Origin: Octopus bimaculoides
Lineage: Eukaryota
Assembly (NCBI RefSeq): GCF_001194135.2
Contig: NC_068985.1
Coordinates: forward strand, 54,856,228 to 54,920,227
Direction of reading: 5' to 3'
DNA: 64,000 nt
This document shows, one piece after another, positions 532-63,793 of the stretch. Numbering within the stretch: position 1 is the stretch's first letter; each line of letters begins with the position of its first letter. A model generated the notes under the pieces. It was given only the letters and a program-made list of their open reading frames with translations, did no database searches and was not told the origin of the DNA. Both the position numbers and the translations under genes were made by a program.

Positions 532-901
532 ATATGTNNNNNNNNNNNNNNNNNNNNNNNNNNNNNNNNNNNNNNNNNNNNNNNNNNNNNNNNNNNNNNN
601 NNNNNNNNNNNNNNNNNNNNNNNNNNNNNNNNNNNNNNNNNNNNNNNNNNNNNNNNNNNNNNNNNNNNNNNNNNNNNNNNNNNNNNNNNNNNNNNNNNNN
701 NNNNNNNNNNNNNNNNNNNNNNNNNNNNNNNNNNNNNNNNNNNNNNNNNNNNNNNNNNNNNNNNNNNNNNNNNNNNNNNNNNNNNNNNNNNNNNNNNNNN
801 NNNNNNNNNNNNNNNNNNNNNNNNNNNNNNNNNNNNNNNNNNNNNNNNNNNNNNNNNNNNNNNNNNNNNNNNNNNNNNNNNNNNNNNNNNNNNNNNNNNN
901 N

Positions 902-8019: not shown

Positions 8020-8225
8020 CCCCACTAGTGTTGGTGTCATGTAAAAAGTGCCCAGTACACTCTGTAAAGTGGTTGGGGACAGAAAAGGCATTCAGCCATA
8101 AGAAACCATGCCAAAGCAGACTTTGTAGCTTGACACAGTCCTCCAGCTTGTTGGATCCTGTCAACAAAACCATTTATCCTATACCAGCATCTAAGACAGA
8201 TATCAAATGATGATAATGATGATGA
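8020..8225 (+). mobile_element. RTE-tail element copy (others at about 945-1125, 30440-30612, 51627-51908 on +; 48895-48975, 50120-50290 on -)
   Basis: Shared core AAAAGCACCC...TTAGGAAGGGCATCCAGCTGTAGAAAC...CAGCATGGAAA...(GAT)n. Confidence 0.65.
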
Positions 8226-8349
8226 CACACACATACACATGTTAGCTAAACTAAGATATGATATGAAGATGTATTGTAACAAACAATCTTGATATCAAGG
8301 ATATTGCAGAGAAATCTACCAAGTCAATATGGACAATTTAGATATTGTT

Positions 8350-11625: not shown

Positions 11626-11635
11626 NNNNNNNNNN

Positions 11636-25994: not shown

Positions 25995-26285
25995 ACAACA
26001 TATCTTTTATCTTTTACTGGTTTCAGTTATTAGACTGAAGTTATGGGGACATACACCAGTACCAGTTGTCAAGCAGTGGTGGGGGATGAACACAGATACA
26101 TGCACGCATGCACACACATACGATGGGCTTCTTTCAGTTTCTGTCTACCAAATCCACTCACAGGGCTTTGGTTGGCCTGAGGCTATAGTAGAAGACACTT
26201 GCCCAAGGGGCCACATAGTGGGACTGAACCCAGAACCATGTGGTTAGGAAGTAAGCTTCTTACCACACAGCCACATGTGCGCCTG
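25995..26285 (-). mobile_element. Family A SINE (internally deleted)
   Basis: Reverse complement of the family A head and tail. Confidence 0.7.
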
Positions 26286-29574: not shown

Positions 29575-29768
29575 CTGTAAATCTTGACATTCTTGCTGTA
29601 GTTGCTTCAGACTGTTTTGTGCTTGAATTGGTGAACTACTCAGAGATACAGCAGCATTGTACAGTTTCTCCAAGTGGGATTGGCATTTGTTTGGACTGAC
29701 AAGAACATCACTGGCACGGCGCAAAGGAGAGTATCGTTCAGTGGGGAAGTGAGGGACAGGATCACATC
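29575..29768 (-). CDS. SIK3: SIK3 exon (GCDPVPHFPTERYSPLRRASD...SLKQLQQECQDLQ)
   Basis: Acceptor gtaaAG, donor GTgact; 194 nt, phase 1/0. Confidence 0.9.
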
Positions 29769-31072
29769 CTTTACAAGATAAAAACAAAAAGAAATGAAAT
29801 GAATTTAAAAGAAAAAATATTTTTTCGTGTTAGTATAATAGAAGGTAAATGAGGTGTTGTTATTGTTTACCTCAAATATGTTGAATCTTGATGACCTCTG
29901 ATGTCACAGGTCAATAACATAAACTATCTCTTTCCCTCTGGAAGGAACTGTATCTGAACAGCAGGATACAACATATAATGTAAATAAAATGAAGAAATCA
30001 GAAACTATGGTGTTGGTATGGATTAGACAGGTGGTTCTTATGACATAGAACTATTTCTCCCAGTCTGGTGACAACTCACCTGTTAGAACCAACTTTCTGA
30101 AATATAATCTTTCTGATAAAGCTTCCTCCACAATCTCAGTAGTTTCCTGCTCAGTAGATATCATCCTTTCACATTGCATGTCTCACATCACATGTCCATA
30201 CCACTACCCTGCACAATACATGTCTATATCACCCAACTCAATACCACATGTTTACATCACTCCACATTCATTGTACTACATGTTGATAATTTATCAAAAT
30301 TTATTTTTACTAACATTTTTGCTATCTTCTCTCTTTTTCCAAGAGGGGTAGCTATGTATCTCCTCTATGGCAACACATCTATTTCTTCCCCTCTATAGCT
30401 ACCTGACATAAAGCCACCTCCCTCCATACTACTTCTCATCCTTCAGTTGGGGGATCTTGTTTGTGAGTTACTTCATAGGAAGGGCATCCAGCTGCAGAAA
30501 CCATGCCAAACCAGAAATTGGGGCTTGGTGTAGTCCTCTGGCTCAACAGCTCCATTCAAACGATCCAACCCATGCCAAGTCGGAAAATGGACATTAAATA
30601 GTGATGATGATTACTTATTTCCATACATGCTTGTAAGGTTACAGAGTTCACTTAGTAACCATATGATTTCTAGTTCTATCTTACAGTGTGGCACTTTGGG
30701 CAAGTGTTTTCTACAATACCCTAAGAATGACCAATGGTTTGAGAGTGAAACTGTTACATGAAACTGTACAGAGTCCCAATGTGAGTGTGTGTGTGTGCGC
30801 GCGCATGCGTGTGTGTGAGAATATTTACACTCAATGTCTTAACATGACAGCCGTGAGCTACAAAACACTGATGCTATTTTCACATTGTCAGGTGCTATGT
30901 TCCATAAACAAGATATCACATATAAAGCATATTTGACAATTCAAAAATCTTCTTAGAGACCGTTATATACACACATGCTCCTCACATTTGCTATATGCAA
31001 TACATTTCTTAAAGAAATTAACCCGAGTTTAATACAATGTAAAAAAAAAAATGTTTTACAGTTAAAATCAAT

Positions 31073-32719: not shown

Positions 32720-32871
32720 CTGTAGTGGTTTCAGCCCGATGTAGGCTACTTCGTCGAATTGTCCTTGCAGAAGGCAAAGTCAGTTTCTTCTGGAGGTCAT
32801 CACGAATTTCTTGCACAGGGCTCGCCATGGCAACAGTATGGCGTTTACACATCCCACGACTATTCATGTAG
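32720..32871 (-). CDS. SIK3: SIK3 exon with KRHTV and RRSS motifs (SYMNSRGMCKRHTVAMASPVQEIRDDLQKKL...IRRSSLHRAETTT)
   Basis: Acceptor tttcAG, donor GTaggt; 152 nt, phase 2/1. Confidence 0.88.
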
Positions 32872-38055: not shown

Positions 38056-38165
38056 TGTGCAAAGACCATCTTTACTGTTGAACTGTGATTGCTGTTGAAA
38101 ATATCGCTGGAAGCAGTGAATATTAGCACCACCATCAGATGCACGTCGACAGAAGTTGGAAGAAC
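38056..38165 (-). CDS. SIK3: SIK3 exon with RRASDGGANI motif
   Basis: Acceptor ttcaAG, donor GTacgt; 110 nt, phase 1/0. Confidence 0.88.
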
Positions 38166-38359
38166 CTTGAAAAAGAATCAATTACAAATCATTAATCAAC
38201 TGTTTAAACCAATAACTGAACTTTCAATGATTACTCAACGATAAACAACTAGAAAGGATTTCTTTTTAGAATAATAATATTCTCTAAAAGACTGCTGTTG
38301 CTGATGTTACTGATGACAATGTTAATGTGGCTAATGTTGCTGTTGTTGTTGATGTTATG

Positions 38360-40351: not shown

Positions 40352-40682
40352 CTGGGCCAAGAATGGGGGGAGGCAAGAGTAGGTTTTGATCACGTTGTAA
40401 AGTTGTTGGAGATGCTGGCAGTTCGTTATGTAGCAACTGTGGAACATTCTGTGGAAGGTTGGTATTTGGTAGTGGTGCTCCAAATGGCATCAAATAATTC
40501 TGTTGAGGAGGCATTGCTATGATTGGTTGATGATTCGCTAGTTTCACTCGGACATCTTCCAAAACTTCATGCCGTGCATCTCCCACACCGACCGTATGTC
40601 GACGCATGGCCAGGTAGCGGGCCAATGCTTCTGGAGAAGGCTCTTCACTGTCAGAGTCAGATTGTTGAGAAGTTGCATCCGA
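40352..40682 (-). CDS. SIK3: SIK3 exon with RRHTV PKA/14-3-3 site (SDATSQQSDSDSEEPSPEALARYLAMRRHTVGVGD...PPPILGP)
   Basis: Acceptor tttcAG, donor GTacat; 331 nt, phase 0/1. Confidence 0.92.
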
Positions 40683-40784
40683 CTGAAACAAACAAACAAT
40701 CAACTATTATTCCAAATAAAATTTCATTGTTATGATAGACTTATGGTAGCCATTATGTTTATTCCACAGTGTCAGTGACCAGAA

Positions 40785-41035
40785 TGTAGATGTATGATGA
40801 CATACTTAGACACTTAATTGTAGATGTATAACATCAAATTATAACATTTTGTAGTAGCTGCATGATCACAAATTTTCAACATTTATTATAGATGTATGAC
40901 AAGAGACTTTGATGCTATACTATAGATGTATGACAAGAGACTTTGAAGCTATACTGTAGATATATGACAACAGACTGATGCTATACTGTAGATGTATGAC
41001 AGCAGACTGACACTTTATAGTATATGATACAATTA
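40785..41035. repeat. Degenerate ~33-bp minisatellite (TATAGATGTATGACAAGAGACTTTGATGCTATAC-like), about 8 units
   Basis: Units read directly; lies in SIK3 intron 40683-41260. Confidence 0.8.
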
Positions 41036-41260
41036 TAAAATTAAGCAAAAGGGAATATAATAGTGTATGTGTGTGTGAGTGTATGTTCATGTGGTTAACA
41101 TTACCATAATGTAAGTAATTTCAACACATGGTCTCTGATTAAGTGGTTTTTGCAAACAAGTTACAAATCCAAAATTCAAAATAAATTGTTTCCAAGAATT
41201 TGAAAGATTAAAATGAAAAAAGTCAAGTGTCTTTGGGAAAAATGAAGTTAATGAACTTAC

Positions 41261-41382
41261 ATCAGGAATTTGTGCTGGGTCAGTAAAGTAAGTTAACTGC
41301 GGAAGAGCTGCCAGAGTTGATGGTGCCAAGTGTGTCGGTGTAGGTTTGTCTAGAACCTCTACAGGTACTTCTACACGTTCAA
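41261..41382 (-). CDS. SIK3: SIK3 exon (VERVEVPVEVLDKPTPTHLAPSTLAALPQLTYFTDPAQIPD)
   Basis: Pyrimidine tract plus ccAG acceptor, donor GTaagt; 122 nt, phase 1/0 fits both neighbours. Confidence 0.85.
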
Positions 41383-41680
41383 CTGGAAAGAAGAAAAGTA
41401 ATGAAAGAATTTGAAAACCAAATAATTCACAAAGACCAATATATTGTTATGAATTACATAAATCTATGCAAAATCTCTTAGATAAATTCTAATTTATTAT
41501 AATAGGTACAAGTATGGTTGTGTGGATACTGTCAGCTGGTGTCATGTGTTATAACTGATTAACTAATATCTTGTCAGTGAAAACAGGTAGATGGAAACTG
41601 AAGAAGCCAGCTGTGTATGTGCGTGTGTGCATGTATGTGTGTGCATGTATGTGTGTAAATATATATAAACATATATGTGC

Positions 41681-41722
<42 letters not shown>

Positions 41723-42157
41723 TTATATATACACACACATGCACATAATGCAGTGAAAGTCTCTCACATTTGTTTTGTTTTTAGCTAGCAAGGGTTGAGG
41801 GCATATCACAACCAGCCTCGAAAATTGTTGCTGCTGCTCCTACTACTGCTGCCACCACCACCACCACCACCACTACCACATGCGCTTGTATGTGTGTGTG
41901 TGTATATACACAGAAGTAATAATAATAATAATAAGTAATATTTACCCCCACTTAAACATGGTAGATACCAAAGAAACTCTCAATATGAGAGTTCCTCTCA
42001 TGGTACAAACAAGAGTGCATTTTGCACTCTTATTTATATTGCTAGTGGAGAGATTAGTTGTCACCACCTCCGGTGCTGAGACCACAATATCATGTGATTT
42101 TGACCGTCCTTAATCCTTTCAATGATGGATGCTCAAGTACTAGTACTGCCTCTATCA

Positions 42158-42196
<39 letters not shown>

Positions 42197-42657
42197 ATAA
42201 TAATAATAATAATGATAAGGATTATTATGAGGTAGCATAGCATTACCTTGAATTCCTTTTTATATATATACAGATTCAAATAGACCTACACATGTTTCTA
42301 CTGCATCAATTAGTAACCATTGCAATTTCAATCCTACTATAATACCGATGCAGTTTCTTCAGGGTCTTCACTTTAATATCCTTTGATTTAACTGTTTAAA
42401 GTTTCTCGTTTATTTACTCTGCATTGTATGATGTGGAGTCATTTGTTAATTTAGACATGAACTATCTTCAATTCAAGTTTTGATTTGATAAGCACTTAAA
42501 GTCAATTATTTCAAAACATTCTCTTGTCTAAATGTTTATTACTCATTTATATTGAGCAAAGGTAAATTTCTTCATATGCAAGCATCTCAAAGCTTGTTCT
42601 AGTCTAGAATTTATTATATTACCCTTAGATGTAGGTAGTGTTACTGCTGCACTCTGT

Positions 42658-42707
<50 letters not shown>

Positions 42708-43049
42708 AAATATATGTATGTATCACAAAATATCACAAAATGCTTTGTGATATTTCTTTTGGCTTTTCAATGTTCTGAGTTTAAATCCTGCTGATATCAT
42801 CTTTACCTTTCACACATTCAGGGTTGATAAAATTATGTACCAATCATGTACTGTAGATTGATATTGTCAATTATTTCCTTCTGCTCAAATTTTTGGCCTT
42901 GTGCTGATGTAGAAAATAATTATTTACAGTGATTTAAAAATTTAATTTTTAATTTAATTAAATACCTATTTTTCTCTTATTTAAACCAACAATGTTTTAA
43001 GTTAATTTTCAAAGCATAACAAAATATAACAGATGGCAATTTGTATGTA

Positions 43050-43407
43050 TCTTTTATTTTTTTATTTCAGTCAATGGACTATGGTCATACTGGGGCACCA
43101 TCTTCAAGGACTTTAGTTGAATAAATCAATTTCGTTTTCTTTTTAAAGTCTGGTAATTATTCTATTGGTCTGTTTTGGTGAACTGATAAGTTATGAGGAT
43201 GTAAACAAACCAACACTGGTTGTCAAGCAGTGGCTGTAGGCAAACACAATAGACTTCTTTCAGTTTCCATCTATCAAATCCACTCACAAGACTTTGGTAA
43301 GCCCAGAGTTATAGTAGAAGATACTTGCCCAAGGTGTTGTACAGTGGGACTGAACCTGGGACCATGTGGTCAAGAAGCAAACTTATTAATAGACAGTCAA
43401 GCCTGCA
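43050..43407 (-). mobile_element. Family A SINE
   Basis: Full-length reverse complement of family A. Confidence 0.7.
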
Positions 43408-44036
43408 CTGTCAGTAATTAGAAAACTGATTACGGGTTGTGTGTTTATATGTTTATAACACACCCAACTCAACACAAGCTTATACATTTTCTATGTAGAT
43501 AGATTAATACTCTATACCTATAACCTTCAAAGACGGTGTGTGTATGTATTTATATATATGAAGACAACTGGAGATAAGCTGCTCAAACACTTTGTCAGGG
43601 CCGCCGATCTTCATCCATTTGTGATTGATTGGAGCCTAGTGCAGCCATCTGGCTCATCAGTCCTCAGTCAAACCATCCGACTCATGCCAGCATGGAAAGC
43701 GGATGCTAAACGATTATTATGATAATGATGATGATGATATTTTGTGAGGGTACATGGCCTAGTGGTTTTGGTGTTACACTCATAATCGCAAAATTGTGGT
43801 TTCAATTCCTGGACCATGCTGTGTTTTGTTCTTGAGCTAAACTCATGTGGTTCTGTGATCACTTCAACATCTGGCATGTAGTACACACTGTACCAGTTCA
43901 TGCAATACTGATTTAATGGAGATATTGAACCAACATGCAGCACAAATATTTGATCACTATAAACAAATCATCAGTGCAAGTTGTTCAGTAAGAAATTGCA
44001 GAAGTCTTTCTCGGATTATGAGAGACTACCATCAAT

Positions 44037-44073
<37 letters not shown>

Positions 44074-44075
44074 AA

Positions 44076-44109
<34 letters not shown>

Positions 44110-44123
44110 NNNNNNNNNNGTGT

Positions 44124-44190
<67 letters not shown>

Positions 44191-44206
44191 ATTTACTGAA
44201 ACTTAC

Positions 44207-44381
44207 CAACACCAGTTGTGATACTTGAACGTCGCTCAGTTCGAGTAGCAACAGGTAAACTGGAACCAAGAGTGTCTGGATTAGACAATTTATTGGTTAA
44301 AGTCTTTGGGTGTCGTTTACATTTGTCTAGTAGAAGATGGTAGATGGCACTATGGTGGTCGTATGCTTCAGTTTTCACAGC
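44207..44381 (-). CDS. SIK3: SIK3 exon, end of UBA plus RRSS motif (AVKTEAYDHHSAIYHLLLDKCKR...ERRSSITTGV)
   Basis: Acceptor ttccAG, donor GTaagt; 175 nt, phase 0/1. AYDHHSAIYHLL matches the SIK UBA. Confidence 0.93.
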
Positions 44382-44821
44382 CTGGAATGATGAGGGACAA
44401 AGGTCAAATCAACATTAAACATTTCAAATGTTGGTGAAGGAAAACACTTAACATATGTACAATTTGTTGTGCATCATCTTATACTCTGAACAGCTAAACA
44501 ATGATGATGATGATAATAGTGATTATCATAAGGATGATGGTTTATCTGAACCCACGATTAAATTTTTCTCTGACACCTAACAGAAACCACATCATACAAT
44601 AGTCCTTTTTCTTACGCTTTACAGTTCTGATGCAGGAGCTAAGACTAGTTTATACTTCTTACAGTACTTTAGAAACTAAGAAAATTCTTCAGAGATATTA
44701 CTCTGGCCTCTATAACAAAAGGGACCAGATCCTGAGAGAAGGACTTTCTTTGGAAGGGCTAGGAATGATTTATTCAAAAGAAATCTATGACATATTTATA
44801 TTATGAGGTCATATTATGCTT

Positions 44822-45151
44822 CCACTTGTTCCAGTCAGTTGACTGTGGCCATGCTGGAGCACTGCCTTAAAAATATCTTAGTCAAAGAAATCGACCCCAG
44901 GAGTTATTCTTTGTAAGCTTAGTAATCATTCTATCGATCTCTTTTGCTAAACTGCTACATTATGGGGATGTAACCATACTAACAATGGTTGTCAAGTGAT
45001 AGTGGGGAACAAACAGACACACATATATATTTTATATATATATATATACATACACACACACATATATATACATACATACACACATATACACACATAAATA
45101 CACACATACACACACACATATATATACATACATACACACATATACATACAT

Positions 45152-45189
<38 letters not shown>

Positions 45190-45370
45190 GACAGGCTTCT
45201 TTCAGTTTCTGTCTACCAAATCCACTCACAAGGATATGGTCGGCCTGAGGCTATAGTAGAAAGTGCTTGTCCAAGGTGCCATGCAGTGGGACTGATGTGG
45301 TTGGGAAACAAGTTTCTTGCTGGAACCATGTGGCTGGGAATCAAGTTTCTTGCCGCACAGCCACGCCTGT
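44822..45370 (-). mobile_element. Family A SINE with expanded internal microsatellite and ~33-nt head duplication
   Basis: Family A tail and head flank about 170 nt of (CA/TA)n; ATGTGG(T/C)TGGGAA(A/T)CAAGTTTCTTGC is repeated twice. Confidence 0.7.
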
Positions 45371-46146
45371 GTATTCAGTAAGGAGCAATATAAAATTATC
45401 CTTGGAGCAGTACTTATACTCCAGCTTCCTGCTCACAGGTATGCTGTCTTGTCTTTTTTCTGCCTTTTCTATTGCTACTAAAATGGTTTCTGTTCCTTGG
45501 AGCTGGATTGTCTCATACATCCACCACTCAGGCAACCCTAACCCACTCATCTCTCCCCTCTTGGCTCTGCATTAATCAGTGTTATTTCCTTGGCTCTACT
45601 ACACTTTCAAAGTTATGTGAAATAAGTGATCCCTTACTTGAAAGACAGGTAAAGGTTAGCAACAGAAAGGGCAACATTGCCTCAATAATATGTACTCATC
45701 TAACCCTGCCAGATTGAAAAACCAAACTAACAAACCTATGAGGCAAACACACTTCTCTTCTCAACTATTTTTTCTCTTTCACACTCCTCCTTTACTCCTC
45801 TGATGAAAGACTACTGTCTGAAACATCTAGACTCTTTCCTTTCATTTTTAAGTATTAAACTAACACAACATTTATTAAAACTTGTCCCTCCTGTGTTGTC
45901 TTTTATCTTTTTTGCCCAATGCTTCCACAATACATCATGCTGAGTTAAAAGCAGCCAACATTTTGAGCCATGAATAACTAGCACTGGAATTTTGGAGAGA
46001 GAGAGAGAAAGAGAGAGAGAGGGAGAGAGAGAGAGAGGGGGAGANNNNNNNNNNNNNNNNNNNNNNNNNNNNNNNNNNNNNNNNNNNNNNNNNNNNNNNN
46101 NNNNNNNNNNNNNNNNNNNNNNNNNNNNNNNNNNNNNNNNNNNNNN

Positions 46147-46203
<57 letters not shown>

Positions 46204-46478
46204 CTCTTTCAGCTGAGTGGACTGGGGCAATGTGAACTGGAGTGCTTGGCTCAAAGATAAATTGCACAGCCCTGTGCCAGAAATTTAACCCATGACTTTG
46301 TAATCACGAACCCAATAACTTAACTACAAGGTCACACATATTCACACACACACACACAAACATGCAAATGAATGAGCGTGGAAGCTCTACTAAAAAGAGA
46401 AAAGAACAAACAAACAAAAGTAAATATATCCATAAAAATTTCAAAAGACATAGGAAAATAATATCTATGAATGTTCAC

Positions 46479-46711
46479 CTCAACAGTTCGTTCTCGGTCC
46501 AGTTTAAAGCTCTCCATGTAGTTGAGTACCTGCTCATTCAGATGATTGGTCTCCTGGCTCAGTTCGGACGAACCATTACAATTCGAGATAAGCTGCTCAA
46601 ACACTTTGTCGGGGCCGCCGATCTTCATCCATTTGTGATTGATCACTTGTTCTATCGATATCCGTTTGACCGGATCAACTACTAACATATGGCTGATCAA
46701 GTTCTCACATT
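46479..46711 (-). CDS. SIK3: SIK3 exon, kinase subdomain XI, linker and start of UBA (ECENLISHMLVVDPVKRISIEQVINHKWM...LNEQVLNYMESFKLDRERTVE)
   Basis: Acceptor atacAG, donor GTgaac; 233 nt, phase 1/0. Confidence 0.93.
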
Positions 46712-47699
46712 CTGTATTAAGTATGACAAAGACACAGACAGATCAGAGAAGAGATAAATGAAAGAAATGAATTATGGTTACTGAATGCTGGCAGACATGT
46801 TATGTTGTTGGTAAAGAGTCTGATGGTAAGAATATATAAAACAAGACAAAATTACAATATAAGATACATCAGTCCCTTGGTTTACATGACACTCAGTTTG
46901 CAGGGTTATGTTTGGGGTTGAATAATCTCCTAAACACTTTATGTACACAGAAGGGCATGCATAGTTGTGTGGTTAAGACAGTCACTTTTGAACCATGTAG
47001 TTTTGAGTTCAGTCCTACTGTGCATCACTTTGGGCAAGTGTCTTGTACTATAACCCTAGAATGACCCAAAGCCTTCAGTGAATTAGGTAAACATGACAAA
47101 ATGTGGAAGCCCACTGTATGTGTGTGTATGTCAAAACAAAAGATTGGAAAACATTTCTGGTGTTATTTATTCACCATTACACATGTTTCATTTGCTAATA
47201 GGAGTAAAAAAATTGTACATGTAAGAGAAACATGTAAAACATCTATTAGCAATCCATCAGACTGAGAATCAAACAATTTTTTCCAGTATCCTGTTTTGAT
47301 ATGTAATTACTCTGCATAACATATTTTCCAGAATTTTCAACTCTTATGAATACCTCATACATATATAACATCTACATATGATTTTGGAGTACTGGAATAG
47401 ATAAATGTGCTTCAAGAGGAGGCAGCTTGGATTTTTACCCTATCTACATATTATNNNNNNNNNNGTGTGGACATGTCCATCTCAACACTGCTTGACAACT
47501 GGTGTTGGTTTGTTTACATCCTCATAACTTAGTGGTTTGATAAAAATGATACAATAGAATAAGTATCAAGCTTAAAAAAAATAAACTACTCTGGTTCAAT
47601 TGTTCAGCTAAGCCCTTCAAGCCAATGCCACAACATGGCTGTAGTCCAATAACTAAAACAAGTAAAGGACAAGATCCAGGGCCACTATCACTTTGTCAT

Positions 47700-48175
47700 T
47701 TCTGTCTCGGATGAGAGACAGCTGCATAAAGTGCTGATCTCTAATTGTGGAGGGAACCTGTGGAAGGGGTAGATACATGAAGACATGGGATGAAATGGTG
47801 ATAAAAGATCTTCAGAGGCTGGGCCTCACTGAGGAGATGAAAAGGGACCAAGACCTCTGGCGATTTGCTGCACTTTCGGCTGAGAGCTCTTTGATTTGCA
47901 GCTGCTGGTGCCATTTAAGTGCACTCATGCTGGTGCCACATAAAATACACTCATGTCAGTACCAGATAGGGTGCACTAATGCCAGTGCTGCATAAAAGCA
48001 CCCAGCACACTCTGTAAAGTGGTTGGCATTAGGAAGGGCATCCAGCCATAGAAACCATGCCAAATAGACAATTGGAGCCTGGACAGCTTTCCAGCTTGTC
48101 AGCTCCTATCAAACTGTAAAACCAATACCAGCATGGAAAACAGATGTTAAACAATGGTGATGATGATGATGATAT
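47700..48175 (+). mobile_element. RTE LINE 3' end with (GAT)n tail
   Basis: GRGRYMKTWDEMVIKDLQRLGL resembles the RTE ORF end, followed by the same 3' UTR as 60330-60580. Confidence 0.65.
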
Positions 48176-49418
48176 TTATTTCATTTTACTTACACATCAC
48201 TTCTTTGACAATGAAAAAGGTCATATTTTGCACTAACTTAAAAGTTAGAATTAATTTTTTCTATATTTTGTTAAATAATTTCAAAACTGAATAATAGAGT
48301 TTTGAATGTCAAGAAAGTTGATTTCTCTAGAATCAAGAATGAAGAAATTAAAATAACTTCAGCTACGAAGAGCAAAAGATTTTAATTTAAATGAATTGTT
48401 AGAAAAATTACAAGAAATGGAGAAAACATTAGAACTAGTTGAATGATTGGATCTCAAATAGCTTTAAAACACACATCATGTAAATGTACTAACATTATAG
48501 AAACAATGGAATAAGTACTACTATTTTGGATAGTAAAGGAAATCCTATATTGTGACAGCAGCCACATGTGTGAGTGTATGTGTGTATGTCTATATATATG
48601 CATATATGTATAGATATACCATGTCCACTCATAAGGCTTTGGTTGGCACAAGGGTATCGTGGAAGACACTTGCCCTAAAAGCCATATAGTGAGCTTGAAC
48701 TTGAGTCAATACGGTTGGGAAACAAGCTTCATAACTACACAGCTATGTCTGTGCCTGGATGAACAGAGACTATATTTTGTCTTCTAGCTAAAAAACAAAA
48801 GTGAGGGGGTATATTTGGTTGGGTGAGGGAGGAATGGCACTTGTCAGTTTAAGAACCACTGGACAAGTTGAGCATTGTATACACACGCATATACATCATC
48901 ATCATCACCATCATTTAATGTCCGCTTTCCATGTTGGCATGGGTTGGATGGTTTGACTGAGGACTGGCGAGCCAGTTATAAAATTGTAGTGGTAGTGGTG
49001 GGGACAGTAATAAATATTTGGGGTACAGCATTATTCATGTGAAATAAATAACAAAGAAATATAATAAAAATAACAATTATGTATGTAGGACTTTTGTAAA
49101 AAAGTTGAATACAATATTATGATAGGGACTTATTTTAGTGGCAGCAATAATGACAGCAAGATTTTATTTTCAAATGTGGTGATAAAAAGACGAAAAAAAG
49201 AAGAAGAAAAACTTCAGTAAGATGTAATTGTTTCAAAAGTGAGATGCAAAGAATGTGTTTCTTGAACAAATGGATGTAGAATGTAAGTCGACATTTGTTT
49301 GTTTATTGTATATATTTTTAGCAAGACCTTGCATCATGCCATAATTGAGGTCTATTGTTTGTTCTCAATAGAAAGAGAGAGAGAAATAGAAGGAAGAAGA
49401 AGAGAGCAATAAATGTTA

Positions 49419-49553
<135 letters not shown>

Positions 49554-50015
49554 CTACAAAAAGAAAACAAAAAAGAAGGAAAATATTAAAATAAAAAAGA
49601 CAAAAAAAAAAAAAAAAAAAANNNNNNNNNNNNNNNNNNNNNNNNNNNNNNNNNNNNNNNNNNNNNNNNNNNNNNNNNNNNNNNNNNNNNNNNNNNNNNN
49701 NNNNNNNNNNNNNNNNNNNNNNNNNNNNNNNNNNNNNNNNNNNNNNNNNNNNNNNNNNNNNNNNNNNNNNNNNNNNNNNNNNNNNNNNNNNNNNNNNNNN
49801 NNNNNNNNNNNNNNNNNNNNNNNNNNNNNNNNNNNNNNNNNNNNNNNNNNNNNNNNNNNNNNNNNNNNNNNNNNNNNNNNNNNNNNNNNNNNNNNNNNNN
49901 NNNNNNNNNNNNNNNNNNNNNNNNNNNNNNNNNNNNNNNNNNNNNNNNNNNNNNNNNNNNNNNNNNNNNNNNNNNNNNNNNNNNNNNNNNNNNNNNNNNN
50001 NNNNNNNNNNNNNNN

Positions 50016-50063
<48 letters not shown>

Positions 50064-51471
50064 ATTAATAAAAACACACACACACACACACACTATATAT
50101 ATATTATACATGCGTATATTTCATTGCTGTAATCTCATTGTTTTACATCCACTTTCCATGTTGGTATGGGCTGGATGGCTAATTACTCCTACACAGATCA
50201 GACGAAAACAACTCATGCAAAACTTCTATTTTAGGTTGGTTCCTACAGCTGGATGCACTTCCTAATTTCAACAAGTTTTCAGAGTATAGTGGATACATTT
50301 TATCAAGCCAAAAGAAAGAAAGAAAGACAGAAAGAAAGAAATAAAGAAAAAAAAGAAAGGAAAAGGAAAGGAAAGAAAGACAGAAAGAAACACAAACACA
50401 CACACCATAGACTCATGTTTGCATCCGTACACACTGAGACATGTAACAGACAAAAAGAAACACACCCACACCCACCCTAACAGTGAAGTTGTGCCCTAAA
50501 CCATGTTATACATCTATACTTTGCTAACCTTGCCACCATCATCATCAACAACAACATCATCATCATTTTAATGTCCACTTTTCTGTATTGGGTTTGAGGA
50601 AATTTGCGCAGGAAGATTTTCTGTACCGAATGTTCTTTCAGTTGCCAATTCTCCCTGCTTCCACACAAGGAAATATTTTCCCCAGTCCTTCAAACAATAA
50701 ACAACTCAATGGTTTTGACCAGTTCTCATAAATGATTACAAACAATGACATTATTTGTATGGATGGTGACTGTCTTTAACTAGCATGCATACATCACAAC
50801 AAAGGGAAGCCACCCACACACGACAGGTTTCTGTATAGGTTCTGCCTACCAATTTCACTGATAGGGCATTGCTCAGCCAGCAGCCATAGTAGAAGATAGT
50901 ACTATACAGTGGTAACGAAACCTAAACTATGCAGTTCTGATTATTTCTTTCTCCATTAAATGCAAACATATTGAAAATAACATGATACAGCTAAGAAGAA
51001 GGGTTATAATCACTCCAGTCTTTAACAGCATTAACCACTGTGCAGGATTTCCATAAACCCAGAAGCTATCTGGTGATTGCTCCACTGTTTGAAGAACATC
51101 AGTCACTAATCATTTCAGTTCTTCAGTAACATTTCACATTTATCTAAGCATTGTTTTTATACACACACACATAGGTGTGTGTGTCTTTGTGTCTGTGTTT
51201 GTCCCTCAGTACCACTTGATAACTGGTGTTGGTGTGTTTACATCCCTGTAGCTTAGCAGTTCAACAAAAGAGATTAATAGAATAAGTACCAGGCTTAAAA
51301 AAAGAAGTACAGGGGTTGATTCATTCGACTTAAAATTCTTCAAGGTGGTGCAGCATGGCCACAGTCTAATGACTGAAATGAGCAGAAGATAATTTCTACT
51401 TCTATAAATTTTATAGCTACCCCCAAACCTTCACTACTGGAAGTAGTTAAAAAAAAAACAAACCTTTTGTC

Positions 51472-52165
51472 AAGGTGTGGCTGTATGGTAAGAAGCTAGC
51501 TTCCCAGCCTCATGGTTCCGAGTTCATTTCCACTGCATGGCATCTTGGGCAAATGTCTTCTACTATAACCTCAGGCTGACCAAAGCCTTGTGAGTGGATT
51601 TAGTAGACAGAAACTGAAAGAAGCTAGGCTGGCATGTAAAAAACACCACTTGAGCATAGCCGTTGCCAGTATCACCAGACTGGCCCTCGTGCCGGTGGCA
51701 CGAAAAAGCATCCACTACACTCTCAGAGTGGTTGGTGTTAGGAAGGGCATCCAGCTGTAGAAACTCTGCCAGATCAGATTGGAGCCTGGTGCAGCCCTCT
51801 GGTTCGCCAGTCCTCAGTCAAATCGTCCAACCCATACTAGCATGGAAAGCAGACATTAAACAATGATGATGATGATGATGACGATGATGATGATGACGAT
51901 GATGATGATATATATATATATATATACATATGTGTATATATGTACATATTTATGTGTGTATGTGTGTGTGTCTGTGTTTGTCCTCCCACCATTGCTTAGC
52001 AACCAATGCTGGTGTGTTTATGTCCCTGTAAATTAGTGGTTCGGCAAAAAAGACCGATAGAATAATTACTAGGCTTACAAAGAATAAGTTCTGGGGTTGA
52101 TTTCTTTGACTAAAACCCTTTAAGTCAATGCTCCAGCATGGCTGCAGTCAAATGACTGAAGGAAT
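51472..52165 (+). mobile_element. Family A SINE interrupted by an RTE-tail element (nested)
   Basis: Head at 51472-51625, RTE tail plus (GAT)n at 51627-51908, microsatellite, then family A tail at 51960-52165. Confidence 0.7.
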
Positions 52166-52443: not shown

Positions 52444-52755
<312 letters not shown>

Positions 52756-57717: not shown

Positions 57718-58179
<462 letters not shown>

Positions 58180-58256: not shown

Positions 58257-59457
58257 CAATCTCATTATCAGAAAATATCCCACAAAATAGAGATCTACCT
58301 CAGTTCTACTCTTCTATGTAGAGCATGTGTTTGTACACACACACACACACTTACTTCTGCATTAATGTATTCATTTGCTTGTGCATTATTTTATGAATGG
58401 GTGCACATAAATATAATATTCATGAATTTGTGCTTCATCCTTCTGTAGGTGCCAAACTAATCTTCTTCGTATAATTCCAAGGTGTTAGATTCATGATTAT
58501 AAATAAAACCACGAGTTCAATTCCCGGACTGAGAAGAGTGTCAGACGAAGAGCAAAGCACTTCATCTGACATTGCTCCAATCTACACAGTTTGTAAATGA
58601 GTACCAGCTGAGTGCCAGTGTAACCTTTTCTCCTTCCAGCTGTCGTAACTATCATATTCCACAGGTTCAAGGGTGGAAGGGCCAAGAGGGTGTCAATGTT
58701 GTCTCCTTGCCACTATATAGGAACCTAAAACAATAGGACAAAATGTGTTACAAGCTGCCAGGTCATACGCACTTGCAAGCGACAGCTAAGTTATGTGTAA
58801 ATGTAATTACATACACACACACATGTATAGAAATGAATGGGCGTGAGAGGAATGAAAAAAAAACAGTGTGCAAGTAGGAAGACTTTGCTGTTTATAGACA
58901 TGCGATACATATGGATGATGACAGATGAAGGAAGAAGTGTTGAATGAATGAAGTGGAAAGATCATAGGGAAGAGGAAGAAGTGGGTAGAAGTGGTGAAGG
59001 TGGATCTTAACAGGCTGAAAGGATGACAAAGGAGTGCAACAAATCAGTGAAGCATTGTGATGGAGAATGTAGATCTAACCCAAGCAAGCATAGAAGAGTT
59101 ATGAGGTGATGGTGGCGGCGATAATGATGATGACAGCATGGAAGCTATCAAATATAAACACACATGTGCATACACAAGGACAGTTATACTTGCATGAAGC
59201 ACATGAAAATACACATTGACAAACCATTAAATATGCATATTATATATACACAAGTAAATGATTATGTGTGTGTGTGTGTGTGTGTGTGTGCATGCACAGG
59301 TGTGACTGTATGGTTAAGAAGTTTGCTTCCCAACCACATGGTTTCAGGATCAGTCCCACTGCGTGGCACCTTGGGTAAGTATCTTCTACTATAGCTCTGA
59401 GATGATCAAAGCCTTGTGAGTGGATTTGGTAGAAGGAAACTGAAAGAAGCCAGTCAC

Positions 59458-59505: not shown

Positions 59506-60580
59506 AAAGGAAGGTTAACCGGGAAGATAGCTTTCATGTGCAGTAGATGCACAGGGGCAATAAACATCACAGATACTCAGAAAACAGATTCCATCAAATG
59601 CCAGGGGGGAGAAAGTAGAAGTAGTTGATTGCTTCCGCTACCTAGGTGACCAAGTCTGTAGTGGGGGTGGATGCTCAGAGAGTGTTACCACTAGAATAAG
59701 AATAGCCTGGGCATAGTCCAGAAAGCTTCTACCCCTACTGGTGACAAAGGGCCTCTCGCTCAGAGTGAAAGGTAGATTGTACGATGCATGTGTGCGAACT
59801 GCCATGCTTCACAGCAGTGGAACATGGGCAATGACTGCTGAAGACATGCGTAGGCTCAAAAGAAATAAAGCAGGCATGATCCGCTGGATGTGTAATGTCA
59901 GTGTGCACACACGACAGAGTGTAAGCGCCCTGAGAGAAATGTTGGACATAAGAAGCATAGGATGTGGTGTGCAAGAGAGATGTTTGTGCTGGTATGGTCA
60001 TGTACTATGGATGGATGGATGAGGAGAGCTGTGTGAAGAAGTGCCACTCTTAAACAGTGGTAGGAATCCGGGGTAGAGGGAGACCCAGGAAGACATGGGC
60101 CTCACAGAGGCAATGACAAGAGACTGAGACCTCTGGAGGTATGCTGTGACTTAGATGACCTGGCAAATAAAGTGAGCTCCCAGCTGTAACCCACACCAGT
60201 GTTGCATAACCAGCCCACTCAAAAGTTCCTTGGATCATAAGGCAACATGCCATGCTTGAGGAGACCTATTGAGTCAAGTACATCAAAATCAAATCAAATC
60301 ACATTCAAATGGATATTGTAGCTGTGATCCCCGTGCCAGTGGCACGTAAAAAGCACCGTCTGATTGTGGTCGATGCCAGACCTCTGGCCCCTGTGCCGGT
60401 GGCATGTAAAAAAGCACCCACTACACTCTCAGAGTGGTTGGTATTAGGAAGGGCATCCAACTGTAGAAACACTGTCAGATCAGACTGGAGCTTGGTGCAG
60501 CCTCCTGGCTTCCCAGACCCCAGTTGAGCCATCCAACCCATGCCAGCATGGAAAACGGATGTTAAACGATGATGATGATA
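59506..60580 (+). mobile_element. 5'-truncated, decayed RTE-clade LINE with 3' UTR and (GAT)n tail
   Basis: Translates (with a frameshift and stops) to FRYLGDQV...RIRIAW...GLSLRVKGRLYDACVRTAMLH...WYGHV, typical of the C-terminal part of RTE reverse transcriptases. Ends ...GGATGTTAAACGATGATGATG. Confidence 0.8.
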
Positions 60581-61947
60581 TATACATATATATATATATA
60601 TATACATACACACACACATATATAAACAGGAGATTGGAAAAAATTTGGTATTATAAATAATACCAAAATTTTTTTCCAATCTCCTGTTTTGATATGTAAT
60701 TACTCTGCAAAAAGTATCTTCCAGTATATTTCAACTCATGCATACCTCACACAAATATNNNNNNNNNNNNNNNNNNNNNNNNNNNNNNNNNNNNNNNNNN
60801 NNNNNNNNNNNNNNNNNNNNNNNNNNNNNNNNNNNNNNNNNNNNNNNNNNNNNNNNNNNNNNNNNNNNNNNNNNNNNNNNNNNNNNNNNNNNNNNNNNNN
60901 NNNNNNNNNNNNNNNNNNNNNNNNNNNNNNNNNNNNNNNNNNNNNNNNNNNNNNNNNNNNNNNNNNNNNNNNNNNNNNNNNNNNNNNNNNNNNNNNNNNN
61001 NNNNNNNNNNNNNNNNNNNNNNNNNNNNNNNNNNNNNNNNNNNNNNNNNNNNNNNNNNNNNNNNNNNNNNNNNNNNNNNNNNNNNNNNNNNNNNNNNNNN
61101 NNNNNNNNNNNNNNNNNNNNNNNNNNNNNNNNNNNNNNNNNNNNNNNNNNNNNNNNNNNNNNNNNNNNNNNNNNNNNNNNNNNNNNNNNNNNNNNNNNTA
61201 TAAAATTAACATTATCATCATTGTTTATCATCCATCTCCTATGCATGAGTAGGATAGTTCATAGGAGCTGGCCAGGTGGAAAACTACCCTATGCTATTGT
61301 GTCTGTTTTGGTAAGATTTTTATGGATGGATGTCCTTCCTAACACCGACCACTCTGCAGATTGGACCCAGTGCTTTTTACGTGGCACTAGCACAGACGAG
61401 GTTAGTTTTGGCATGATTTTAATAGTTGGATGCCTTTCCAAATGCCAACCACTTTACAGTGTGGACTGGATGCTTTTTATGTATATGTATGTGCATGTTC
61501 AAATAGACAGCTGTCTCCTTGCCTTGACATAATGATATATTTATTAATGAGCCTCAACTCTCACAAGCACTGATGTTCGTTTCCAATCTATGAAAACATG
61601 TCTGGCCACAGGCAAAAATATTACCTTGCTTGGAAAGAGGTGCAAGTTGAAGACAGGATGGGCATCTGACCATGGAAAAATCTACCTCAACAAATCCCGT
61701 CTGACTCATACAAATATGGAAATGTGGGTGACATTAAAATGATGTTGAGTATATCAATAAATAAGTTTATAAACTCAGATAAAAGGTTTTTAAACAAAAC
61801 AGCCACCTCAGTAAATGGATCAAATAACAATTACTGTGTTTTATATGGAAATTACACTGCTTCTGTCGACTAACATTCACAGACTATGTAGGTGTAAAAT
61901 TAAGTATCTATGTATGTGTACGTGTCTGTGAGATATCTTAATCCTTT

Positions 61948-62218: not shown

Positions 62219-62867
62219 CAATTGACTTCTTTCAGTCTCCGTCAACCAAATCCACTCACAGAGCTTTGGTTGACCTAAGGCTAGAGTAGAAGACCCAAGG
62301 TGCATTGCAGTGGGACTGAACCTGGAATCATGTAGTTGGGGAGCAAGCTTCTTACCACGCAGCTATGACTCTATAAATATATATATGGTGCAGGAATGGC
62401 TGTGTGGTAAGTAGCTTGCTTACCAACCACATGGTTCTGGGTTCAGTCCCACTACGTGGCACCTTGGGCAAGTGTCTTCTTCTATAGCCTCAGGCTGACT
62501 AAAGTTTTGTGAGTGGATCTGGTAGACGGAAACTAAAAGAAGCCTATATATGTATGTGTATGTTTGTGTGTGTCCCCCCACCATCGCTTGACAACCGATG
62601 TTGGTGTGTTTATGTCCCCATAACCTAGTGGTTCAGCAAAAGAACTGATAGAATAAGTACTAGGCTTACAAAGAATAAGTCTTGGAGTTGACTTGTGCGA
62701 CTAAAGGCAGTGCTCCAGCATGGCTGTAGTCAAATGACTGAAACAAATAAAAGAATATATATANNNNNNNNNNNNNNNNNNNNNNNNNNNNNNNNNNNNN
62801 NNNNNNNNNNNNNNNNNNNNNNNNNNNNNNNNNNNNNNNNNNNNNNNNNNNNNNNNNNNNNNNNNNN

Positions 62868-62905
<38 letters not shown>

Positions 62906-63793
62906 AACATATTTGCGTGTGTGTGTATATATGCCAATGTTTATTTAAAGTTATTATTCTAAAGTAATTTTAAGAATAACAGAACATCTACTGAGTAGGG
63001 ATATTACAAAAAAGTAGAGTCAAATTCATTGTAAAATTTGTTATGACTGGGACATTTAGGTTTCACCTGACAACTTACTCAGCCAGATTAGTTGCTTAAG
63101 CCATAAAGGTGAAACTTAAAACCCCAGACCAAAATAAAAATATTATTTATCTTTCTACTAGGTATAGGTGTGACTGTGTGGTAATAAGTTTGCTCCCCAA
63201 TCACATAGTTATAGGTTCAGTCCCACTGTGTGTCACTTTAAGCGAATGTCTCCTGCTATAGCCCTGGACTGATTAAAGTCTTGTGGGTGGATTTGGTAGA
63301 TGGAAACTGAAAGAAGCCTATCATATATGCGTGTGTCATTGTGTTTGTGTTTGTTCCTCATCATCGCTTGACGACCAACGTTAGTTTGTTTACATCCCCC
63401 ATAATCTAGTGGGTCAGCAAAAGAGTCTGACAGAATAAGTACCAGGGTTTAAAAATAAATCCTGGGGTTGATTCAGTCAACTAAAACCCTTCATGTTAAT
63501 ACCCCAGCATGGCCACAGTCCAATAATTGAAACAAGTAATAGATATAGTGTATTTTATCTTTTACTTGTTTCAGTCATTTGACTGCGGTCATGCTGGGGT
63601 ACTGCCTTGAAAGACTTAAGTCAAACAAATCAACCCCAGGACTTATTTTTTTAAGCCTAGTACTTATTCTATCAGTCTCTTTGGCCAAACTGCTAAGTTA
63701 CAGGGATGTAAATATACCAACACCAGTTGTCAAGTTGTGTGGAGAACAAACACAGACACAAAACACACACACACACACACATAGATACACACA

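What the first reader, a model, noticed from the sequence alone, without database searches (positions are those of the whole stretch)
43571..43740. A 59-nt copy of a SIK3 coding exon fused to a retroelement tail inside a downstream SIK3 intron
Seen: 43571-43629 matches 46585-46643 (kinase XI/linker exon, INHKWMKIGGPDKVFEQLIS) at 58/59, in direct orientation, 3014 bp away. The only difference (43597) is a synonymous CCC/CCT at a CpG. It joins through a GAT microhomology to the 3' part of an RTE-tail element (TGGAGCCTAGTGCAGCC...GGAAAGCGGATGCTAAACG, (GAT)n tail). That part looks clearly more diverged from its sister copies than the exon piece is from its source, and I see no TSD. Inference: a recent locally templated insertion into an older element, or an RT template switch. 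Any + strand transcript through this element would carry 59 nt antisense to SIK3 mRNA, a possible dsRNA/ADAR/small-RNA handle. No good splice sites flank it, so it is unlikely to be a pseudo-exon.
Basis: partly seen in the sequence, partly recalled or inferred. Interest (0 to 1): 0.75.

Follow-up and report, generated by a model that had tools for sequence, protein, structure and literature searches.

The report
Exon scrap beside a truncated retroelement
A 59-base piece of a SIK3 coding exon really is copied into a nearby intron of the same gene, next to a shortened retroelement, and it looks like an ordinary, harmless DNA-repair scar rather than a working part.

Summary
Window 43571-43629 equals 46585-46643 at 58/59, in direct orientation, and chance cannot explain it. 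The source lies inside a 233-nt minus-strand exon (46479-46711) whose best solved relative is human SIK3. The copy lies in intron 40683-44206, the second intron downstream of the source exon, not the first.

To its right is the last ~112 nt of a ~415-bp SINE-like repeat with a LINE-type (GAT)n tail. Sister copies continue 5' of the junction, so this copy is cut off exactly where the exon piece ends. There is no target-site duplication. Junction homologies are short: 0-3 nt on the right and 5/7 on the left.

The exon piece is antisense to SIK3 while the element is sense. This excludes a simple reverse-transcriptase jump onto SIK3 mRNA. It fits extension of the opposite DNA end on a local template, either nascent SIK3 RNA or the exon DNA. 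That could have happened when the element integrated or at a later break. Human L1 experiments have shown both routes.

The claimed age gap between the two parts fades once only private substitutions are counted (p = 0.4). Nothing supports an antisense or dsRNA role. Sequence from related species could not be obtained.

The parts
43571..43629 (+). 59-nt copy of an internal segment of a SIK3 exon. On the + strand it reads antisense to SIK3; on the - strand it reads INHKWMKIGGPDKVFEQLIS.
   Evidence: 58/59 identity to 46585-46643; tblastn hit at 43623-43564; only exon-derived duplicate in the window.
43564..43570 (+). Left junction. An imperfect 7-nt similarity to the exon bases just before the source segment (ACAACTG against ACAATTC). 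It may be a priming microhomology or a more diverged end of the copy.
   Evidence: BLAST extension to 63/66; P(>=5/7) about 0.02.
43627..43629 (+). Right junction. GAT could belong to either the exon copy or the element, giving 0-3 nt of microhomology depending on the source element.
   Evidence: Sisters read ...CAGATCAG-ATTGGAGCC (3 copies) or -ACTGGAGCC (3 copies).
43630..43711 (+). The 3'-terminal module of a ~415-bp SINE-like repeat, 5'-truncated. The same module ends a LINE fragment elsewhere in the window.
   Evidence: Alignments to 51777-51864, 2703-2790, 60483-60570, 48071-48156 and others. Sisters continue 5' for up to ~300 nt.
43712..43738 (+). Degenerate (GAT)n 3' tail: GAT TAT TAT GAT AAT GAT GAT GAT GAT.
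   Evidence: Sequence read. Sister copies end in (GAT)n.
46585..46643 (-). Source segment: positions 69-127 of the 233-nt exon.
46479..46711 (-). SIK3-like exon covering the end of the kinase domain and the linker into the UBA region. It has a cag|AATGTG acceptor and a GAG|GTGAAC donor.
   Evidence: Best PDB matches are human SIK3 (8oku, E = 7e-17; 8r4o); the next best are MARK/AMPK at E > 1e-4. Pfam Pkinase C-terminal end, below cut-off. Boundaries.
44207..44381 (-). Next SIK3 exon (UBA continuation, AVKTEAYDHHSAIYHLLLDKCKRH...). It lies between the source exon and the copy.
   Evidence: tblastn; splice sites ccag|GCTGTG and GTTG|GTAAGT.
40683..44206 (-). The intron that hosts the copy. The copy lies about 580 nt downstream of the exon 44207-44381 donor, in transcript sense.
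   Evidence: Exon boundaries. The copy and exon 40416-40682 lie in one gap-free stretch, 11636-44109.

Best explanation
The 59 nt are a neutral 'filler' patch made when a 5'-truncated SINE/LINE-tail copy integrated into this SIK3 intron.

Proposed steps:
1. The element RNA was reverse-transcribed from its (GAT)n tail on the bottom strand (target-primed reverse transcription). Synthesis stopped about 112 nt in.
2. The opposite (reciprocal) DNA end was the top-strand 3' end at about 43570. It annealed by a few bases to a local template of minus-strand polarity. That template was either nascent SIK3 pre-mRNA passing through the site or the exon DNA about 3 kb away.
3. That end was extended by 59 nt.
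4. Its new 3' end (...TTGAT) was joined to the element cDNA by end joining with 0-3 nt of microhomology.

The result is an exon scrap that is antisense relative to the element, sitting at the element's truncation point without a target-site duplication. It has no function.

Shown: the duplicate, its orientation, the truncation point, the short junction homologies, the absence of a TSD, and the local donor. Inferred: the timing (at integration), the enzyme, and whether the template was RNA or DNA.
For: - The exon piece ends exactly where the element is cut off. Sisters continue 5' with ...GGGCATCCAGCTGTAGAAACTCTGCCAGATCAG before (A/T)TGGAGCC.
- 5'-truncated tails of this family are common in the window: 30476-30598, 48894-48975, 60340-60580. 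Truncated integration is therefore the normal fate of this family.
- The orientation (element sense, exon piece antisense to SIK3) is what reciprocal-end extension predicts. It is the opposite of what first-strand template switching onto SIK3 mRNA predicts.
- The donor is in the same gene, about 3 kb away, and is transcribed before the insertion site. A random cellular RNA would almost never come from the host gene, so a physically local template is indicated.
- Junctions show 0-3 nt and 5/7 nt of homology.
- Experimental precedent in human L1 (PMC11702581, section 7). [quoted passage not shown] - RTE-clade LINEs are reported as recently active in Octopus (PMC9115989, PMC13282606).
Against: - There is no TSD. 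In the L1 data, twin-primed insertions usually keep one (PMC11702581).
- Taken at face value, the tail looks older than the exon piece: 11/88 against a crude consensus, or 14/115 with the impure tail, compared with 1/59 (p = 0.02-0.03). This favours a later event. The contrast vanishes when only private changes are counted (p = 0.4).
- Timing cannot be read from a single allele.
- No related genome could be obtained.
- The right-junction microhomology is uncertain.
Confidence: 0.45

Rival explanations
1. Later break repair. A longer, possibly full-length, element already sat here. A double-strand break or replication-fork collapse inside it removed its 5' part and perhaps some flank. The gap was bridged by a microhomology-primed templated insertion copied from the exon 3 kb away or from the SIK3 transcript (MMEJ / polymerase-theta-type, MMBIR/FoSTeS-type, or class-2 'templated sequence insertion' repair).
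For: - No TSD and short junction homologies.
- The donor is intact and local.
- The face-value divergence contrast is 11/88 against 1/59, p = 0.028; with the impure (GAT)n tail it is 14/115, p = 0.021.
- Repeats fill much of these introns, so a random break often falls inside one. The 'coincidence' with the truncation point would then be created by the event itself.
- Class-2 templated insertions have exactly these junction features (PMC5110952).
Against: - The age contrast is not robust: 4-5 private changes in 88 nt against 1 in 59, p = 0.40-0.65. CpG loss is similar in both parts (alignment).
- By my recollection, polymerase-theta templated inserts are usually shorter and copied from within tens of bases. 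This was not checked here.
- Class-2 TSIs are described as coming from distant loci.
- Truncated tails of this family arise routinely at integration.
Confidence: 0.33
2. Classical chimeric retrocopy. The element's reverse transcriptase, while copying element RNA, switched template onto SIK3 mRNA, as in U6-L1 chimeras.
For: The exon piece sits at the 5' end of the element copy, with possible GAT microhomology. Template switching is well documented for L1 (PMC4476161, listed; PMC11702581).
Against: The orientation test fails. Continued first-strand synthesis on SIK3 mRNA would place SIK3-sense sequence upstream of the element, but the piece is antisense. The model survives only if the second template was an antisense transcript or the plus DNA strand of the exon, and there is no evidence for either.
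Confidence: 0.05
3. Assembly or gap-closing artefact. The 59 nt were wrongly placed here from reads of the real exon, possibly from the other haplotype.
For: The window is a scaffold with nine runs of N, two of them between copy and source. If 46611 is heterozygous, the single difference could be an allele of the exon.
Against: - The copy lies inside a 32-kb gap-free stretch, 11636-44109.
- Both junctions share only 0-5 nt with the exon flanks, far too little for an assembler to join.
- The longest exact runs shared by the two loci are 26 and 32 nt, so they share no long k-mers.
- The flanks on either side are unrelated to the exon's flanks.
Confidence: 0.05
4. Functional module. The copy is kept because a plus-strand transcript carrying it pairs with SIK3 mRNA (dsRNA / ADAR / small-RNA handle), or because it acts as a decoy or cryptic exon.
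For: 59 nt of near-perfect complementarity would be enough for pairing if a plus-strand RNA existed. Weak cryptic splice sites lie further out: an acceptor at 43706 and donors at 43524 and 43517.
Against: - Within SIK3 pre-mRNA the two copies are direct repeats, so they cannot pair. No inverted copy exists in the window.
- No source of plus-strand transcription is evident. The element has lost its 5' part, and the complete SINE on the left points away from the copy.
- Immediate splice sites are poor, and 59 nt would shift the reading frame.
- One substitution in 59 nt says nothing about constraint.
Confidence: 0.03

Closest known systems
Non-canonical L1 insertions with two pieces in opposite orientation (heterologous twin priming / reciprocal-end RT extension; PMC11702581 section 7; twin-priming model of Ostertag & Kazazian 2001)
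   Same: A retroelement 3' segment is joined at its truncation point to a short piece of another transcript in the opposite transcriptional orientation. There are short or no microhomologies at the junction.
   Different: The second template is the host gene itself, in cis. No TSD survives. RNA origin cannot be shown, because the piece lies inside one exon.
[quoted passage not shown] S10 as cited in section 7)
   Same: Local genomic sequence is copied into the junction between the retroelement cDNA and the reciprocal DNA end, and the donor is left intact.
   Different: I could not read the donor distances in that study. Here the donor is about 3 kb away and happens to be a coding exon.
Class-2 templated sequence insertions (TSI/TSIP; Onozawa & Aplan, PMC5110952)
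   Same: A short templated patch with no TSD and no poly(A), microhomology at the junctions, an intact donor, and a possibly RNA-derived origin.
   Different: Class-2 TSIs are described as coming from distant loci and stand alone. This patch is local and fused to a retroelement tail.
Chimeric retrogenes made by RT template switching (U6-L1 type; PMC4476161)
   Same: A foreign sequence sits at the 5' end of a truncated retroelement copy.
   Different: Those chimeras have both parts in the same sense. Here the parts are in opposite sense, so the defining geometry is not met.

Membership tests
5'-truncated non-LTR retroelement (LINE/SINE) insertion | Homology to the 3' end of a multi-copy family whose other copies extend further 5' | tested here: met
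   Seven sisters align from 43627/43630 onward. Four continue 5' for 100-300 nt.
5'-truncated non-LTR retroelement (LINE/SINE) insertion | Simple-repeat 3' tail at the element end | tested here: met
   Degenerate (GAT)9 at 43712-43738. Sisters end in (GAT)n.
5'-truncated non-LTR retroelement (LINE/SINE) insertion | Target-site duplication flanking the whole insert | tested here: not met
   Longest shared word is 5 nt; 96% of shuffles equal it. Age, or a deletion at integration, could have removed a TSD.
SINE with a LINE-derived tail | The tail module is shared with the 3' end of a LINE that carries coding sequence | tested here: met
   At 47994-48177 the tail module follows an open frame ending ...GRGRYMKTWDEMVIKDLQRLGLTEEMKRDQDLWRFAA.... 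This is a single, short fragment.
SINE with a LINE-derived tail | tRNA-derived, pol III-type head | tested here: inconclusive
   Rfam found no tRNA match in 51400-51950 at E <= 10. Box-A/B-like strings are seen by eye only.
RTE clade | The partner LINE falls in the RTE clade by RT/APE phylogeny | not tested
   Only about 50 C-terminal codons of the LINE are in the window. The motif seen is, to my knowledge, shared by several LINE clades. RTE activity in Octopus is reported in the literature.
Twin-priming-type (reciprocal-end) RT product | The two segments lie in opposite orientation relative to their RNAs | tested here: met
   The element is sense on +. The exon piece is antisense to the minus-strand SIK3 gene.
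Twin-priming-type (reciprocal-end) RT product | Microhomology between the flank 3' end and the second template | tested here: inconclusive
   5/7 imperfect, P about 0.02, with a mismatched terminal base.
Twin-priming-type (reciprocal-end) RT product | The second segment is RNA-derived (splice junction or other RNA mark) | not testable with these tools
   The source is positions 69-127 of a 233-nt exon, so no exon-exon or exon-intron boundary is included.
Template-switch chimeric retrocopy (U6-L1 type) | Both parts lie in the same sense as their RNAs | tested here: not met
   Opposite sense.
Locally templated insertion at a break (MMEJ / MMBIR type) | Intact donor nearby in cis, with microhomology at both junctions | tested here: inconclusive
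   The donor is intact and about 3 kb away, across two N gaps. Junction homologies are 5/7 and 0-3 nt.
SIK3 (source gene) | Closest solved relative is SIK3 rather than another AMPK-family kinase, with a collinear set of exons | tested here: met
   PDB SIK3 at E = 7e-17 against MARK/AMPK at E > 1e-4. Ten collinear minus-strand exon matches from 58011 to 29575, including RRHTVGV and RRASDGGANI.

The most novel reading that the evidence does not exclude
A LINE reverse transcriptase reverse-transcribed the patch from the host gene's own nascent SIK3 pre-mRNA, primed from the reciprocal DNA end. This would be a natural, germline, non-mammalian example of heterologous twin priming. It would suggest that transcripts tethered at the integration site are preferred second templates.
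Probability: 0.2. Interest if true: 0.45.

Novelty: new member of a known kind. Interest (0 to 1): 0.22.

Why it matters
As a single locus it matters little. It is a neutral scar in an intron and does not alter the SIK3 coding sequence.

Its value is as a fossil of how (GAT)n-tailed LINE/SINE integrations are resolved in this genome. The orientation rule lets one tell first-strand template switching from extension of the opposite DNA end. A genome-wide census of such 5'-junction fillers could show two things:
- whether host transcripts are used as templates, which fillers spanning splice junctions would reveal;
- how often exon scraps are scattered into introns this way.

It is also a caution for annotation. 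Short exon-identical scraps next to repeats can seed false exon or paralogue calls.

Tried and rejected
Orthologous or independent sequence: none could be obtained.
- A protein search with the 76-aa exon peptide found nothing.
- Exact-product look-ups of the 122-aa and 36-aa window ORFs found nothing.
- Collection scans for the SINE tail (metagenome and viral contigs) and for the exon segment (metagenome contigs only) gave 0 hits.
- The public collections reachable here therefore appear to lack this organism. The species could not be verified.

Inverted SINE head at 43254-43408 as the twin-primed 5' half of the same element: rejected. It is part of a complete, independent ~365-bp SINE of another family (43044-43408) that aligns end to end with copies at 62388-62763, 2188-2549 and 63171-63535. 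43409-43563 has no other copy in the window.

Remnant of a processed SIK3 pseudogene: rejected. Homology stops within 7 nt on the left and at the element on the right.

Gene conversion: rejected. There are no homologous flanks.

Known RNA families: Rfam scans of 42500-47500 and 51400-51950 gave only far sub-threshold hits on microsatellites. ARAGORN found no tRNA in 43000-44300.

(GAT)n tail purity as a clock: rejected. Sister copies with more diverged bodies have purer tails.

Full report

Yes. Window 43571-43629 and 46585-46643 are identical at 58 of 59 positions on the same strand. The expected number of such matches in a 64-kb window is about 3e-21.

The single difference is 43597 A against 46611 G. 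On the coding (minus) strand this is CCT against CCC, both proline. It removes one of the segment's three CpGs in the copy.

BLAST extends the match seven bases to the left, giving 43564-43629 against 46578-46643 at 63/66. Those seven bases (ACAACTG against ACAATTC) match at 5/7, which chance gives about 2% of the time. I treat this as a possible priming microhomology, not as established.

No other SIK3 exon has a second copy in the window, and there is no inverted copy.

**2. The source and the gene**

The source lies inside a minus-strand exon at 46479-46711. The exon is 233 nt long, with acceptor cag|AATGTG and donor GAG|GTGAAC, and the source is positions 69-127 of it.

The exon peptide's best solved relatives are human SIK3 (8oku, E = 7e-17; 8r4o). 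MARK and AMPK score only E > 1e-4. Pfam sees the C-terminal end of a protein kinase domain, below its cut-off.

These include ...[12 protein letters not shown]..., DFGFSN...YAAPE, the UBA continuation, RRHTVGV and RRASDGGANI.

The next exon downstream is 44207-44381 and the one after starts at 40682. The copy therefore sits in intron 40683-44206. That is the second intron downstream of the source exon, about 580 nt past the donor of exon 44207-44381.

**3. The assembly**

The window contains nine runs of N. Two of them (44110-44119 and 46045-46146) lie between copy and source, so the 3014-bp spacing is nominal.

The copy lies in a gap-free stretch, 11636-44109, that also holds exon 40416-40682. 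Its placement inside the gene is therefore secure.

An assembly chimera is unlikely. The two loci share exact runs of only 26 and 32 nt. The copy's flanks share only 0-5 nt with the exon's flanks.

**4. The element on the right**

43630-43711 plus a degenerate (GAT)9 at 43712-43738 is the 3' end of a repeat family. The best full copy in the window is 51473-51888, about 415 bp. Other copies lie at 2685-2880, 60340-60580, 47994-48177, 30476-30598, 48894-48975 and 8025-8226.

Sisters continue 5' of the junction with ...GGGCATCCAGCTGTAGAAACTCTGCCAGATCAG before (A/T... or A/C...)TGGAGCC. Our copy is therefore 5'-truncated exactly where the exon piece ends.

The GAT at 43627-43629 is shared with the element only if its source read ATTGG. 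Three of six sisters read ACTGG.

At 47994-48177 the same tail module follows an open frame ending ...GRGRYMKTWDEMVIKDLQRLGLTEEMKRDQDLWRFAA. This looks like the C-terminus of a LINE ORF, so the tail is LINE-derived. I could not test the RTE clade itself. A tRNA origin for the head was not confirmed either.

RTE LINEs and SINEs are reported as abundant and recently active in Octopus (PMC13282606, PMC9115989).

There is no target-site duplication.

**5. Surroundings**

To the left, 43044-43408 is a complete, independent minus-strand SINE of another family that shares the head module. It is not an inverted half of our element. 43409-43563 has no other copy in the window.

To the right, 43745-43835 looks tRNA-like by eye. 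It has no sister in the window, and neither ARAGORN nor Rfam calls it.

**6. What the orientation says**

The element is sense on the plus strand. The exon piece on the plus strand is antisense to SIK3.

In target-primed reverse transcription the first cDNA is the bottom strand and grows leftward. If it had jumped onto a second RNA, the top strand would carry that RNA's sense sequence. SIK3 mRNA is therefore excluded as the target of a classical template switch.

The top-strand 3' end at the left side of the break behaves differently. Extended on a minus-polarity template (SIK3 pre-mRNA or mRNA, or the minus DNA strand of the exon), it would write exactly 46585 to 46643 in the observed orientation and in the direction a polymerase must travel. 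Its new end, ...TTGAT, could then join the element cDNA.

This is the geometry of twin priming with a different template. Recent L1 experiments describe both variants (PMC11702581 section 7):
[quoted passage not shown] The donor is in the same gene, a few kb away, and is transcribed before the insertion site. That argues for a physically local template. The segment lies inside one exon, so RNA and DNA templates cannot be told apart.

**7. When did it happen?**

Distances to sister copies are the wrong measure for this.

Against a leave-one-out consensus of seven in-window sisters, the tail differs at 11/88, and it is the copy closest to that consensus. Fisher's test against 1/59 gives p = 0.028. 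Against 3/66 it gives p = 0.15.

Six of the 11 differences are shared with some sister. These reflect subfamily or CpG states rather than private change. That leaves 4-5 private changes in 88 nt against 1 in 59, p = 0.40-0.65. CpG loss is similar in the two parts: about 3 of 6 in the tail (from the alignment) and 1 of 3 in the patch.

The impure (GAT)n tail points the other way (14/115 against 1/59, p = 0.021). However, sister tails are purer than their more diverged bodies, so tail purity is a poor clock.

Timing therefore stays open. I rate one-step origin at integration at about 0.45 and a later break inside an older, longer element at about 0.33. The later-break features would match class-2 templated insertions (PMC5110952).

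**8. Function**

None is indicated.
- The two copies are direct repeats in the pre-mRNA and cannot pair.
- No plus-strand promoter is evident.
- Splice sites immediately beside the copy are poor. Weak candidates lie further out: an acceptor at 43706 and donors at 43524 and 43517.
- One change in 59 nt cannot show constraint.

**9. Limits**

No related or independent sequence could be retrieved. The species, the polymorphism status and the orthologous site are therefore untested.

**10. Verdict**

The duplicate is real and was correctly spotted. It is best read as a repair or integration scar of a known kind. Its mechanistic interest is modest and there is no evidence of function.

Noticed in passing
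window 538-901, 2021-2130, 11626-11635, 44110-44119, 46045-46146, 47455-47464, 49622-50015, 60759-61198, 62764-62867: There are nine runs of N, so the window is a scaffold of contigs. Distances across gaps, including the distance between the exon copy and its source, are nominal.
   Followed up: yes
window 29575-58011, minus strand: Ten collinear SIK3-like exon matches: the kinase core at 57835-58011, about 52489-52620 and 49431-49550; the kinase end at 46479-46711; UBA at 44207-44381; RRHTVGV at 40416-40682; RRASDGGANI near 38119-38223; a second KRHTVAM site at 32781-32870; and 29575-29751. Exon ends were refined only for three of them.
   Followed up: partly
window ~47900-48177, plus strand: A heavily 5'-truncated LINE 3' end. 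The open frame ends ...GRGRYMKTWDEMVIKDLQRLGLTEEMKRDQDLWRFAA and is followed by the same tail module and (GAT)n as the SINE-like family. The clade was not determined.
   Followed up: partly
window 43044-43408 (minus) and at least 12 other places, e.g. 26120-26273, 59297-59453, 62388-62763, 63171-63535: The ~155-nt head module is far commoner in the window than the (GAT)n tail module, and it is joined to at least two different 3' halves. This suggests modular SINE families that share one head.
   Followed up: partly
window 43745-43835, plus strand: This stretch (GGGTACATGGCCTAGTGGTT...GGTTTCAATTCCTGGACC) looks tRNA- or SINE-head-like by eye. It has no sister copy in the window, and neither ARAGORN nor Rfam calls it.
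   Followed up: partly
window 44035-44185 and 45995-46201: Related microsatellite-like tracts flank the N gaps at 44110-44119 and 46045-46146. The contig breaks therefore coincide with simple repeats. These tracts also give spurious sub-threshold miRNA hits in Rfam at 44997-45196.
   Followed up: no
window 43564-43570 against 46578-46584: On the minus strand the copy reads LISSC (TCC AGT) where the exon reads LISNC (TCG AAT). If the 7-nt extension is part of the copy, it may preserve an older state of the exon: one synonymous and one Ser/Asn change. This can be tested with SIK3 from related species.
   Followed up: no
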